This document shows, piece after piece, positions 62,636-64,000 of a stretch of 64,000 nt of DNA. A program made the translations under genes and the position numbers. This DNA comes from Phaeosaccion multiseriatum (lineage: Eukaryota > Protista > Ochrophyta, other classes). A model generated the notes under the pieces. The model saw only the letters and a program-made list of their open reading frames with translations, did no database searches and had not been told where the DNA came from. The stretch is from positions 1,736,001 through 1,800,000 of the forward strand of contig OZ218961.1 of assembly GCA_965112735.1 (NCBI GenBank), given 5' to 3'. How positions within the stretch are numbered: the first letter of the stretch is position 1; every line of letters begins with the position of its first letter.

Positions 62636-64000
62636 TCACTGACAGTGAGTGAGACCAAGCGCCGTGGCCCTGTCCACCTGCCACACCTGCGCTACAGTGT
62701 GGAACTCCCCATTCTCTCCAAAGAGATCGACTTGAGGTGCCTCCAAGGCAAGCCTCTCTCGGAACTCAGGAGTGTACATCTCCCCTACCTTCACCGCGTC
62801 AATCGTAGAGCTGGACACTTGACAGGGTACTTGCGAGGAGGCCAGGTCCTCCTCCAGCACCGAATAGGAGACATTGAAGAGAGGATACAGGAGGTTGTAG
62901 CCCAGACAACCCAACTGGTCGTCTCTCCAGCCTTTAATGTGTTCTAAATGAAGGTCCCCGAAGACGAGGGTCTTCGCCTTGCAGCCGGCGTACTTTTCAA
63001 TGACTTCAAGTCCGCGTTGTATTCTCTGGACGTAGCCTTCGGAGCTTCCCCGATGTACCGGGATGCCCAACAGCGAGATGTCAAGGTGTGTCGCTTGCCT
63101 TACGACCGTGTCTATGGATGCCTCTTGATGAGCAATGACCCTCGACGAGCAATCAAACGTCGTTAGTAGCACCAACCCAAACCTTTGCTCCGCTGCCTCC
63201 CTGGCCATTGCTCGTATCGTCAGGAAGCTATCTTTCCCACCACTGAAAAACAACACGCGAACCTCTGCCACCCCGTTCAGAAGAGCAAACGGGGTCATCT
63301 TCTCCTCCTCCTTCTCCTCTGCCTTGTAGAGAAAGGCCGGCTGCTGGATTCTGAACGCCTTGCCGTCCTTAACATTCTCATGTGCATAAGGGCAATGCCG
63401 ACAGCCTGAACCACAACACCGGCCCCTTGCCTTTGCAGCGACTTCCGTAAAGACACTGTAGCCAGTTTGAGGGTCCTTGTAGCTCATCCTGCCTGCCTCA
63501 CATGCTTCTCGATGGAGCGTGTAAAAGTCTTCTATGTCAGGAGCAGGCTCGCCCCCATCGCCAGTGACGGCAGCAACTTGTTTCGGTGTTGGTTGTACGA
63601 CAGTGTTTTTCCTCAGATCCACCTTCATCCACCCCACAAAGTCCGGAGGAAGAAAGGGCAGAGCCCTGATGGCGGCGACGACTGCAGGACAGTCTTCATG
63701 GGCAGCCAGCGCCATGATGGCAGTCCCTGTGAGCAGGTTGGGCCCTGGATTGGCAAAGTACTTGTCGCCGTTGCATGCAAACACACTGTTGGATGAAACC
63801 GCACGTGGGCACGCCTTTCGGAGTGCGTCACCAGCAGCGTGGGCGTCTTTGTAGTTCCGCTGTAAGTCAAAGCCACAGCATCCAATCAACACCACTTCAG
63901 GATCCGCTCCTTCAACACAGTTCCACGTCATTGGCCTTGACTTGCGAATCGTTTTGAATCGAATCGCATTCTCAACTTGGGCGCGCTGCATCATATCGAT
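62636..64000 (-). CDS. 5'-partial fusion protein: BtuF/Fe-B12 substrate-binding-like C-lobe + DUF5522-like Cys motif + Dph6/MJ0570-like PP-loop ATPase
   Basis: [35 protein letters not shown]; [33 protein letters not shown]; [38 protein letters not shown]. Confidence 0.75.

What the first reader, a model, noticed from the sequence alone, without database searches (positions are those of the whole stretch)
62636..64000. Three-domain fusion: B12-type binding protein + DUF5522 + Dph6-like ATP-dependent ligase, a candidate eukaryotic cobamide salvage/remodelling enzyme
Seen: one uninterrupted ORF of at least 452 aa, in a genome where nearly every gene has introns, joining (i) a PxVxxIxxCGF...GxxYFxxPGP segment, (ii) YxDPxTGYxVFT...[14 protein letters not shown] and (iii) SGGKDS...FGDLHL...GENGEFHT. 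Knowledge: these correspond to cobalamin/iron-type ABC substrate-binding proteins, DUF5522 (C1orf53-like) and the diphthine-ammonia-ligase-like PP-loop family, which adenylates carboxylates for amidation. My recollection, not verified here, is that these three occur as neighbouring genes in bacterial B12 uptake loci. Inference: this is a Rosetta-stone fusion of a bacterial operon that binds corrinoids and amidates or repairs them in an alga, and it would also assign a function to DUF5522. Caveat: a possible GT donor lies right at the 3' end and the N-terminus is outside the window.
Basis: partly seen in the sequence, partly recalled or inferred. Interest (0 to 1): 0.85.

Follow-up and report, generated by a model that had tools for sequence, protein, structure and literature searches.

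The report
Algal BtuF-like/DUF5522/PP-loop fusion tied to B12
This alga carries an intron-free gene joining a vitamin-B12/heme-type binding fold, the small cysteine-rich domain also found in human C1orf53, and an ATP-using ligase domain; bacterial versions of the same three parts sit behind vitamin-B12 riboswitches, which points to an undescribed B12-handling enzyme.

Summary
On the minus strand, 62636-64000, a frame of 454 codons is open to the window edge. It encodes the C-terminal lobe of a class III binding-protein fold, DUF5522 (E 8e-21) and a Dph6-type PP-loop domain (26.7 bits, above Pfam's cut-off). The C-terminus is collinear with homologues, so no 3' intron is needed. About 230-300 N-terminal residues lie outside the window.

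The same three-domain protein is widespread in diatoms, Symbiodinium and Rhodella, and occurs in a few Myxococcota.

The B12 reading is partly supported:
- In bacteria the parts are adjacent, overlapping genes: a binding protein without signal peptide, then DUF5522/PP-loop.
- In 10 of 11 assessable operons that also carry a DUF6580 membrane protein, a cobalamin riboswitch lies directly upstream.
- No riboswitch was found in the 24 other loci scanned.
- DUF5522 is also fused to bona fide PduO-type cobalamin adenosyltransferases in marine protists.
- DUF5522 is the conserved domain of vertebrate C1orf53.

It is not canonical DPH6 and not a periplasmic BtuF. The proposed chemistry, adenylation and amidation of a corrinoid, remains inference. 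An invariant His/Cys4 set in the binding fold, predicted from loop positions to line the cleft, is unexplained. No paper describes the family. The scan also noted this same stretch from the adjoining window (s1-360350).

The parts
62636..64000 (-). C-terminal 454 codons plus stop of the three-domain gene; the N-terminal ~230-300 codons lie beyond base 64000
   Evidence: note s1-360350 gives 2246 letters for the whole stretch
63581..64000 (-). C-terminal lobe of the class III (BtuF/heme-binder-like) binding fold, residues 1-140. It includes invariant Trp26 and the CCGF motif (Cys41, Cys42).
   Evidence: Alignments A1 and A5. Homologues carry PF01497. AF2 model of P0001:12-366 and Foldseek.
63374..63517 (-). 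DUF5522 domain (residues 162-209), the C1orf53-type domain
   Evidence: Pfam E 7.8e-21; 60-65% identical to vertebrate C1orf53 homologues over ~55 residues
63386..63418 (-). Invariant four-cysteine motif [11 protein letters not shown] (residues 195-205)
   Evidence: Invariant in 77 sequences and in 40 diverse DUF5522 proteins
62693..63253 (-). Dph6-type PP-loop ATP pyrophosphatase domain (residues 250-436)
   Evidence: Pfam. AF2 pLDDT 90; best PDB matches are PH1257 and PF0828.
63227..63244 (-). PP-loop motif SGGKDS (residues 253-258)
   Evidence: Read directly; invariant
62939..62962 (-). Family-specific motif FGDLHLEH (residues 347-354). It replaces the G-A-L...Y-Q stretch of Dph6-type structures and includes a 4-residue insertion.
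   Evidence: Invariant; profile alignment to PF0828/PH1257
62696..62719 (-). Motif GENGEFHT (residues 428-435), counterpart of GEGGEFET in Dph6-type structures
62636..62638 (-). Stop codon; the protein end is collinear with homologues

Best explanation
The gene encodes a cytosolic, single-chain version of a bacterial cobalamin-regulated module.

Shown:
- A signal-peptide-less class III binding fold of the small tetrapyrrole-binder type (BtuF/heme binders) is joined to DUF5522 (a Cys4 knuckle) and to a Dph6-type PP-loop ATP pyrophosphatase.
- In bacteria the same parts are translationally coupled genes.
- In Sphingomonadales- and Pseudomonadales-type operons these genes follow a small membrane protein (DUF6580) behind a cobalamin riboswitch. 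In two loci they lie next to a second cobalamin riboswitch that precedes a TonB-dependent receptor.
- DUF5522 is independently fused to PduO-type ATP:cob(I)alamin adenosyltransferase.

Inferred mechanism:
1. An imported corrinoid is held in the cleft of the binding domain.
2. The invariant His/Cys residues of that domain and the Cys4 DUF5522 module deal with the cobalt centre, by thiolate ligation/ligand exchange or through a bound metal or Fe-S centre.
3. The PP-loop domain uses ATP -> AMP + PPi to adenylate an acid group of the corrinoid and closes an amide bond.

Two candidate reactions for step 3: re-amidation of a deamidated side chain with ammonia, or re-attachment of aminopropanol(-phosphate) to cobyric acid, which would be a CbiB-like step. 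Either would turn an incomplete or damaged corrinoid into a usable cobamide.

I put about 0.65 on 'works on or with corrinoids' and about 0.25 on the amide-ligase chemistry specifically.
For: Architecture.

Bacterial two-domain relatives at 41-49% identity.

Orthology of the adjacent binding protein: an HMM of the eukaryotic N-terminal domain hits the bacterial upstream genes at E 1e-43 to 1e-57 in 24 loci, and three fused bacterial proteins at about 1e-85. Their maximal ORFs start at the first beta-strand, so there is no signal peptide.

Cobalamin riboswitch RF00174:
- 83-98 bits, 20-50 nt upstream of DUF6580 on the same strand in L008, L032, L041, L042, L045, L050, L051, L059 and L067; 70 bits, about 130 nt upstream, in L055.
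- None in 16 loci lacking the binding protein.
- A convergent TonB-dependent receptor preceded by its own B12 riboswitch in L045/L059.

DUF5522 + PduO-type adenosyltransferase fusions:
- Six 50%-identity clusters.
- One reaches the PduO_Nterm equivalog cut-off (134.7 vs 108.45 bits).
- One is a single ORF on metagenome contigs of up to 27 kb.
- An Atlas cluster of 68 members.

Folds:
- The PP-loop part matches PH1257/PF0828.
- The binding part matches 4m7o, heme binders and BtuF. V. cholerae BtuF scores E 1e-11 by profile and shares a G-H-W loop.

Phyletic argument: eukaryotic carriers cannot make corrins, so a role in using imported corrinoids fits better than a role in cobalt supply (established knowledge).
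Against: - No binding or activity data exist, and no RNA data.
- Only about 12 of 80 bacterial loci carry the riboswitch-type operon. These come from few lineages (Erythrobacteraceae/Sphingomonadales, Pseudomonadales, one other Pseudomonadota).
- Twelve Nitrospinota-type loci have the binding protein adjacent; the eight that were scanned have no riboswitch.
- Of 80 loci, 53 have neither. Other contexts seen are nadA-nadC, dcd and an amidohydrolase.
- A riboswitch also fits a B12-independent backup function.
- The fold search ranks heme binders at least as high as BtuF.
- The cleft carries invariant His/Cys4, and part of it sits in a CxVCAP insertion absent from the solved binding proteins aligned. 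This could mean an Fe-S or metal site rather than a corrinoid pocket.
- Known corrin amidations (CobB/CbiA, CobQ/CbiP) use a different enzyme class.
- DUF5522 also occurs with unrelated partners: a Por secretion tail, and nematode uL14m.
Confidence: 0.5

Rival explanations
1. A B12-repressed backup enzyme that never touches corrinoids. In this reading it is an Fe-S/metal-containing PP-loop enzyme, with Cys4 in the binding-fold cleft and Cys4 in DUF5522. It would carry out an adenylation-dependent amide or sulfur transfer on some other metabolite, replacing a B12-dependent step when B12 is scarce.
For: - Riboswitch control fits backup enzymes as well as uptake (established knowledge: metE, nrdAB).
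- Invariant His/Cys4 in the binding fold, partly in an insertion absent from the solved binding proteins aligned.
- Weaker fold matches to [4Fe-4S] PP-loop sulfur transferases NcsA, TtuA-type and LarE.
- One nadA-nadC operon context.
Against: - DUF5522 is fused to genuine cobalamin adenosyltransferases.
- The operon partner is a small membrane protein, and a riboswitch-controlled TonB receptor lies next to it. This looks like acquisition.
- No B12-dependent reaction shared by diatoms, dinoflagellates, red algae and these bacteria is known to have a PP-loop substitute.
Confidence: 0.2
2. A heme/iron-tetrapyrrole or siderophore-handling protein. The binding fold would hold heme or an iron chelate, as public annotations suggest ('Fe3+-hydroxamate', 'hemin transport'), and the enzyme part would modify it.
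For: The top Foldseek hits are heme binders BhuT, ShuT, PhuT, RhuT and HutB plus an 'iron-binding protein', 4m7o. Source names are listed.
Against: - A cobalamin riboswitch, not an iron-regulated context, precedes the bacterial operons.
- V. cholerae BtuF is the second-best PDB hit by profile.
- DUF5522-adenosyltransferase fusions.
- Fold rank among class III binders does not predict the ligand.
Confidence: 0.1
3. A cytosolic B12 chaperone/trafficking protein without ligase chemistry on the corrinoid. The binding domain and DUF5522 would pass cobalamin to client enzymes, a role like CblC/CblD. The PP-loop domain would use ATP only to drive loading, release or upper-ligand exchange.
For: The same comparative evidence as the main explanation. 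Vertebrate C1orf53 consists of an N-terminal extension plus DUF5522 and has no enzyme domain.
Against: The PP-loop motif and the family-specific catalytic-site motifs are invariant across 77 sequences. This suggests real adenylation chemistry. PP-loop enzymes are not known as mechanical ATPases (established knowledge).
Confidence: 0.12
4. Ordinary annotation is right: it is diphthine-ammonia ligase (DPH6) or a periplasmic ABC-transporter substrate-binding protein.
For: Source names; Pfam Diphthami_syn_2 and Peripla_BP_2 hits.
Against: - TIGR03679 scores 20-47 bits against a 197-bit cut-off.
- There are no C-terminal RidA-type domains; the protein ends after the PP-loop domain.
- Close relatives occur in bacteria, which lack diphthamide.
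- There is no signal peptide and no ABC permease or ATPase genes beside it.
- The BtuF equivalog scores 15-34 bits against a 234-bit cut-off.
Confidence: 0.03

Closest known systems
Dph6 / MJ0570-type N-type ATP pyrophosphatases (PH1257, PF0828; Pfam Diphthami_syn_2)
   Same: Same fold and PP-loop SGGKDS. The C-terminal G-E-x-G-E-F-x-T motif is shared. These are the best structural matches (TM by target 0.62-0.66) and the only sequence matches in the PDB. The chemistry is expected to be carboxylate adenylation followed by amide formation.
   Different: Only 18-22% identity. It falls far below the Dph6 equivalog cut-off. G-A-L..Y-Q is replaced by an invariant G-D-L-H-L-E-H-I-x-x-W-R with a 4-residue insertion. 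It is always preceded by DUF5522, has no RidA-type tail, and is present in bacteria without diphthamide.
BtuF (periplasmic vitamin B12-binding protein) and small heme-binding class III SBPs (ShuT, PhuT, BhuT)
   Same: A two-lobe fold joined by a long helix, with TM by target 0.73-0.80. Profile E-value is 1e-11 to V. cholerae BtuF, which shares a G-H-W loop.
   Different: No signal peptide, and not next to ABC permease/ATPase genes. It is fused or coupled to cytosolic enzyme domains. It carries invariant His-x-Cys, Cys-x-x-Cys (an insertion) and Cys-Cys-Gly-Phe motifs; the solved binding proteins aligned lack the CxVCAP insertion.
CBA1, the algal cobalamin acquisition protein
   Same: An algal protein with a BtuF-like predicted fold, linked to B12 (PMC10828217).
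   Different: CBA1 has a signal peptide, is ER-targeted and has no enzyme domains. It is described as the only known algal B12 uptake protein. The protein here is cytosolic by sequence and carries DUF5522 plus a PP-loop. Homology between the two was not tested.
PduO-type ATP:cob(I)alamin adenosyltransferase (MMAB) fused to DUF5522
   Same: It shares the DUF5522 Cys4 module, in one or two copies N-terminal to the enzyme.
   Different: The catalytic domain is a different fold with different chemistry (adenosyl transfer to Co(I)). The window protein has no such domain.
Cysteine-based cobalamin handling proteins (BtuM, the CblC-CblD pair, the HX11CCX2C motif of EutT). Recalled from memory, not tested here.
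   Same: Conserved cysteines used to ligate or process the cobalt centre. BtuM-like genes also sit behind B12 riboswitches.
   Different: No detectable sequence relation. A profile of DUF6580 finds no BtuM chain in the PDB. The Cys spacing of DUF5522 (CC-x-x-x-C-x-x-C) is its own.

Membership tests
DPH6 (diphthine-ammonia ligase) | Diphthami_syn_2 PP-loop domain with SGGxDS | tested here: met
   Pfam 26.7 bits against a cut-off of 23.2; SGGKDS at residues 253-258
DPH6 (diphthine-ammonia ligase) | Reaches the equivalog model score (TIGR03679, 197.3 bits) | tested here: not met
   20.3 bits for the window protein; 18-47 bits for homologues
DPH6 (diphthine-ammonia ligase) | Eukaryotic architecture with C-terminal RidA/YjgF-type domains (from established knowledge) | tested here: not met
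   The protein ends 18 residues after the PP-loop domain, as do 11 homologues; no such Pfam hit
DPH6 (diphthine-ammonia ligase) | Amidates diphthine on EF2 | not testable with these tools
   Close relatives in bacteria, which lack diphthamide, argue against it
BtuF / class III substrate-binding proteins | Two alpha/beta lobes joined by a long backbone helix | tested here: met
   AF2 model of homologue P0001:12-366, pLDDT 93.5; 174 PDB matches with E<=1e-3, all listed ones class III SBPs. The window holds only the C-terminal lobe.
BtuF / class III substrate-binding proteins | Signal peptide and periplasmic location | tested here: not met
   Maximal ORFs of 18 bacterial orthologues listed and of eukaryotic homologues begin at or a few residues before beta-strand 1. 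The window's own N-terminus is outside the window.
BtuF / class III substrate-binding proteins | BtuF equivalog score (NF002894, 234 bits) and adjacent btuCD-type genes | tested here: not met
   15-34 bits; no ABC permease or ATPase among recurrent neighbours
BtuF / class III substrate-binding proteins | Binds cobalamin | not testable with these tools
   Indirect support only: riboswitch context, G-H-W loop shared with V. cholerae BtuF
DUF5522 (PF17653; C1orf53-type domain) | Model score of at least 25 bits and the CCGxGCxxCPY motif | tested here: met
   74.3 bits; motif at residues 195-205; vertebrate C1orf53 homologues hit at E 1e-15 to 1e-16
Cobalamin-riboswitch regulon | Orthologues lie downstream of an RF00174 aptamer on the same strand in one operon | tested here: inconclusive
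   Met in 10 of 11 assessable DUF6580-type operons (70-98 bits). Not met in 8 Nitrospinota-type loci, 3 fused loci and 16 loci without the binding protein. Riboswitch control cannot apply to the eukaryotic gene itself.

The most novel reading that the evidence does not exclude
DUF5522 (human C1orf53) is a general cobalamin-handling module. The three-domain protein would then be a previously unrecognised ATP-dependent corrinoid repair/remodelling ligase, shared by marine bacteria and B12-dependent algae. It could supply the amide-forming step (re-amidation, or a CbiB-like re-attachment of aminopropanol) that algal remodelling schemes lack. By extension, vertebrate C1orf53 would be a missing component of B12 trafficking next to MMAB.
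Probability: 0.25. Interest if true: 0.9.

Novelty: new variant of a known kind. Interest (0 to 1): 0.8.

Why it matters
More than half of algal species need B12, yet CBA1 is described as the only protein known for algal uptake, and the steps after entry are largely unknown.

This family gives a concrete, testable candidate for intracellular corrinoid processing in diatoms, dinoflagellates and red algae, and in marine bacteria. One cultured carrier is available: Novosphingopyxis baekryungensis DSM 16222.

It also gives the first functional lead for two domains of unknown function:
- DUF5522, and through it the uncharacterised human gene C1orf53.
- DUF6580.

Finally, it corrects database names ('diphthine-ammonia ligase', 'ABC transporter substrate-binding protein') that are very probably wrong.

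Tried and rejected
- Direct PDB sequence search of the whole protein found nothing significant.
- Three bacterial contexts fetched by exact protein look-up showed no B12 genes: peptidase/CstA/ArsA, dcd, and nadA-nadC.
- DUF6580 against the PDB, by single sequence and by profile, found no BtuM or ECF S-component. The Atlas only returned DUF6580 clusters, one auto-named 'CbiM family'. Its transporter role therefore stays an inference.
- Neighbours in Nitrospinota-type and fused Myxococcota loci gave no informative families.
- The amidohydrolase downstream in Longimicrobiales is generic, not CbiZ.
- Literature searches for DUF5522, DUF6580, and diphthine + cobalamin + diatom found nothing. C1orf53 papers are expression lists only.
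- Sequencing runs: only DNA contigs of one sample. There was no RNA, so no expression or splice evidence.
HMM cut-offs, motifs and architecture were used instead.
- Model coordinates cannot be read in scripts, so distances between the Cys sites and the PP-loop pocket were not measured.
- The 3' GT-donor idea was rejected on collinearity.
- Contamination was rejected on equal depth and eukaryotic nearest relatives.
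Full report
**1. What is in the window**

The feature lies on the minus strand. The stop codon is at 62636-62638 and the frame stays open up to base 64000, which gives 454 codons. 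The ORF list shows 452 aa from an internal ATG at 63994.

Pfam finds two domains:
- DUF5522 at residues 162-209 (E 7.8e-21).
- Diphthami_syn_2 at residues 250-436 (26.7 bits, cut-off 23.2).

The first 140 residues have no Pfam hit on their own. They align at 45-67% identity with the C-terminal lobe of the N-terminal domain of 640-770-aa homologues, and most of those carry PF01497 Peripla_BP_2.

The protein ends ...ALGLTHCQ*, exactly where 11 homologues end. The possible splice donor at the 3' end is therefore not needed. About 230-300 N-terminal residues lie beyond the window. The scan's note on the adjoining window (s1-360350) gives 2246 letters for the whole stretch.

DNA contigs from four runs of one sample cover the gene at the same depth as the neighbouring cyclase gene, so it is part of this genome. 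No RNA run was on offer.

**2. The family**

The three-domain protein is common in several eukaryotic groups:
- Diatoms: Nitzschia, Cylindrotheca, Pseudo-nitzschia, Fistulifera, Mayamaea, Stephanocyclus.
- Symbiodinium.
- Rhodella.
- Many marine metagenome contigs.

A shorter form in Amorphochlora has only DUF5522 plus the PP-loop domain.

Bacteria have a ~275-aa DUF5522 + PP-loop protein at 41-49% identity. It was found in 156 places among one genome for each of 185,579 bacterial and archaeal species. The carriers are mostly marine: Erythrobacteraceae, Pseudomonadales, Longimicrobiales/Gemmatimonadota, Verrucomicrobiales, Nitrospinota, Rhodothermales and Myxococcota.

In a quick maximum-likelihood tree, one starred branch (99) splits the sequences into two sides:
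- The window protein, all eukaryote-type sequences and the three bacterial triple fusions (two Myxococcota, one unclassified Pseudomonadota).
- All other bacterial two-domain proteins.

The fusion is therefore not a eukaryotic invention. The direction of transfer cannot be told from an unrooted tree. A 2011 survey already listed the diatom family as 'C1orf53, ABC, prokaryotic origin' (PMC3237598).

**3. The bacterial gene neighbourhood**

I called ORFs in the 80 fetched loci and clustered them. The commonest neighbour is a 270-315-aa Peripla_BP_2 protein. It lies immediately upstream on the same strand and usually overlaps the start of the DUF5522/PP-loop gene.

An HMM built from the eukaryotic N-terminal domain hits these proteins at E 1e-43 to 1e-57. 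That compares with about 1e-10 for the generic Pfam model. By this measure 24 loci have the protein as a separate gene (23 immediately upstream; in L055 it lies about 2.4 kb downstream) and 3 have it fused. These are orthologues of the algal domain, not just any binding protein.

Their maximal ORFs begin at the first beta-strand (M-R-V-V-S-L-L-P-S-A-T...), so they have no signal peptide.

In 12 loci a DUF6580 membrane protein precedes the pair. Rfam's cobalamin riboswitch model gives the following:
- It matches at 83-98 bits, 20-50 nt upstream of DUF6580 on the same strand, in 9 of these loci, and at 70 bits about 130 nt upstream in L055.
- One further locus is cut by the contig end.
- One (L079) has the aptamer on the other strand, facing a divergent gene.
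- In L045 (Novosphingopyxis baekryungensis DSM 16222) and L059, a convergent TonB-dependent receptor with its own cobalamin riboswitch follows.

As controls, three other groups had no cobalamin riboswitch anywhere in about 17 kb each:
- 16 loci without the binding protein.
- 8 Nitrospinota-type loci with it.
- The 3 fused loci.

The B12 signal is thus strong but confined to one operon type in a few proteobacterial lineages.

**4. DUF5522 on its own**

An exhaustive search with the 66-residue domain finds 2085 cluster representatives. Many are stand-alone proteins of 60-160 aa. The ~145-aa group is the vertebrate 'C1orf53 homolog', at 60-65% identity over the domain.

Among 40 longer proteins scanned:
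- 13 carry Peripla_BP_2.
- 6 carry Diphthami_syn_2.
- 6 carry Cob_adeno_trans.

Evidence that the adenosyltransferase fusions are real:
- P0396, from a marine protist transcriptome, has two DUF5522 copies followed by a full PduO-type adenosyltransferase. It scores Pfam E 8e-50 and PduO_Nterm 134.7 bits against a cut-off of 108.45.
- P0475 is a single ORF on metagenome contigs of up to 27 kb, with ten cluster members.
- The Atlas holds a 68-member cluster with this architecture.

This is a second, independent link between DUF5522 and cobalamin. The Atlas also shows DUF5522 with a Por secretion tail in Bacteroidota and with uL14m in nematodes, so not every partner is B12-related.

**5. Structures**

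*C-terminal part.* The DUF5522 + PP-loop part of the window protein folds confidently (pLDDT 90.2, pTM 0.85). Confidence is lower only around the Cys motif. Its best PDB matches are PH1257 and PF0828, the Dph6-type N-type ATP pyrophosphatases. Weaker matches go to [4Fe-4S] PP-loop sulfur transferases and other PP-loop enzymes.

The profile alignment shows two differences at the Dph6 motifs:
- G-A-L...Y-Q is replaced by the invariant G-D-L-H-L-E-H-I-x-x-W-R, with a four-residue insertion.
- G-E-G-G-E-F-E-T is replaced by G-E-N-G-E-F-H-T.

*N-terminal part.* The N-terminal domain of homologue P0001 (pLDDT 93.5) is a class III binding fold. Foldseek puts 4m7o, the heme binders BhuT, ShuT, PhuT and RhuT, and V. 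cholerae and E. coli BtuF on top. By sequence profile the order is 4m7o, V. cholerae BtuF (1e-11), then ShuT.

**6. An unexplained feature**

Across 41 eukaryotic and 14 bacterial rows, the binding domain has a set of fully invariant residues. In P0001 numbering these are His45, Cys47, Cys118, Cys121, Cys269, Trp217, Trp227 and Trp253. In the window protein, Cys42 and Trp26 correspond to Cys269 and Trp253.

By their position at the C-terminal ends of beta-strands in the model, these residues should line the inter-lobe cleft. This is an inference, because coordinates could not be read. The C-x-V-C-A-P stretch is an insertion relative to solved binding proteins.

Four cysteines and a histidine suggest either thiolate ligation of a cobalt centre or a metal/Fe-S site. 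This is the main reason not to call the domain simply 'BtuF-like'.

**7. Reading**

The comparative evidence supports the following points:
- It is not DPH6.
- It is not a periplasmic transporter component.
- It works as one unit with DUF5522 and the binding fold.
- In some bacteria it is switched off by cobalamin, together with a membrane protein and next to a BtuB-like receptor.

Eukaryotic carriers cannot make corrins, and DUF5522 also rides on cobalamin adenosyltransferase. The best reading is therefore intracellular handling of imported corrinoids. The PP-loop domain would adenylate an acid group and close an amide bond. Candidate reactions are re-amidation of deamidated side chains, or re-attachment of aminopropanol(-phosphate) to cobyric acid.

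That chemistry is inferred from the enzyme family only. The rivals are listed with their odds: a B12-repressed backup enzyme, heme handling, and a pure chaperone.

**8. Novelty**

- No paper in the searchable library mentions DUF5522 or DUF6580.
- C1orf53 appears only in expression lists.
- A 2026 preprint still calls CBA1 the only known algal B12 uptake protein.
- Public names for this family ('diphthine-ammonia ligase', 'ABC transporter substrate-binding protein') are very probably misleading.

Noticed in passing
window 62553-62640: A C/T-rich low-complexity stretch (CCCTCC-type) lies just downstream of the stop codon. Assembly unitigs of all four runs break here, and summed word depth jumps about 100-fold. 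The motif is therefore very abundant across the genome.
   Followed up: no
   Followed up: no
window 60730-62056 (-): The next gene downstream on the same strand starts about 580 nt after the stop. It looks like exons of the cyclase noted by another reader (s1-342344). It is separate from the fusion gene.
   Followed up: no
L045 8824-11152 and L059 (same layout): A TonB-dependent receptor lies convergent to the operon and is preceded by its own cobalamin riboswitch (77-78 bits). Two B12 aptamers therefore flank one ~4.7-kb locus.
   Followed up: partly
L008 6688-7218, L055 10678-11196 and 10 other loci: DUF6580 is a ~175-aa membrane protein with invariant P-H, D-x-x-N-G-x-Y and one Cys. It is the first gene behind the riboswitch and is a candidate inner-membrane corrinoid (or cobalt) transporter. 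No PDB relative was found by sequence.
   Followed up: partly
P0396, P0475, P0513, P0495, P0395, P0506; L084-L086: DUF5522 (one or two copies) is fused N-terminally to PduO-type cobalamin adenosyltransferase in marine protists and on metagenome contigs.
   Followed up: yes
Atlas clusters: Two other DUF5522 architectures: with mitochondrial ribosomal protein uL14m in nematodes (50 members), and with a Por secretion tail in Bacteroidota (73 members).
   Followed up: no
L003 8072-10846; L002 9438-10822: In two gammaproteobacterial genomes the DUF5522/PP-loop gene overlaps the end of nadA-nadC or of dcd. This suggests other operon contexts. NaMN, the NadC product, is also the CobT substrate (from memory).
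   Followed up: no
L017 8823-10445 and 9 other Longimicrobiales/Gemmatimonadota loci: A 510-540-aa Amidohydro_1 protein lies immediately downstream on the same strand. This hydrolase-ligase pairing could bear on the substrate. The best NCBIfam hit is a generic Xaa-Pro dipeptidase-like model.
   Followed up: partly
L009 538-1323 and 7 other Erythrobacter-type loci: A ~260-aa multi-pass membrane protein without any Pfam family lies immediately upstream of the DUF5522/PP-loop gene, in loci that lack the binding protein and the riboswitch.
   Followed up: no
P0001 residues 45, 47, 118, 121, 269 (window residues 41-42 for the CC of CCGF): An invariant His/Cys4 set in the binding fold, shared by all eukaryotic and bacterial members.
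   Followed up: partly
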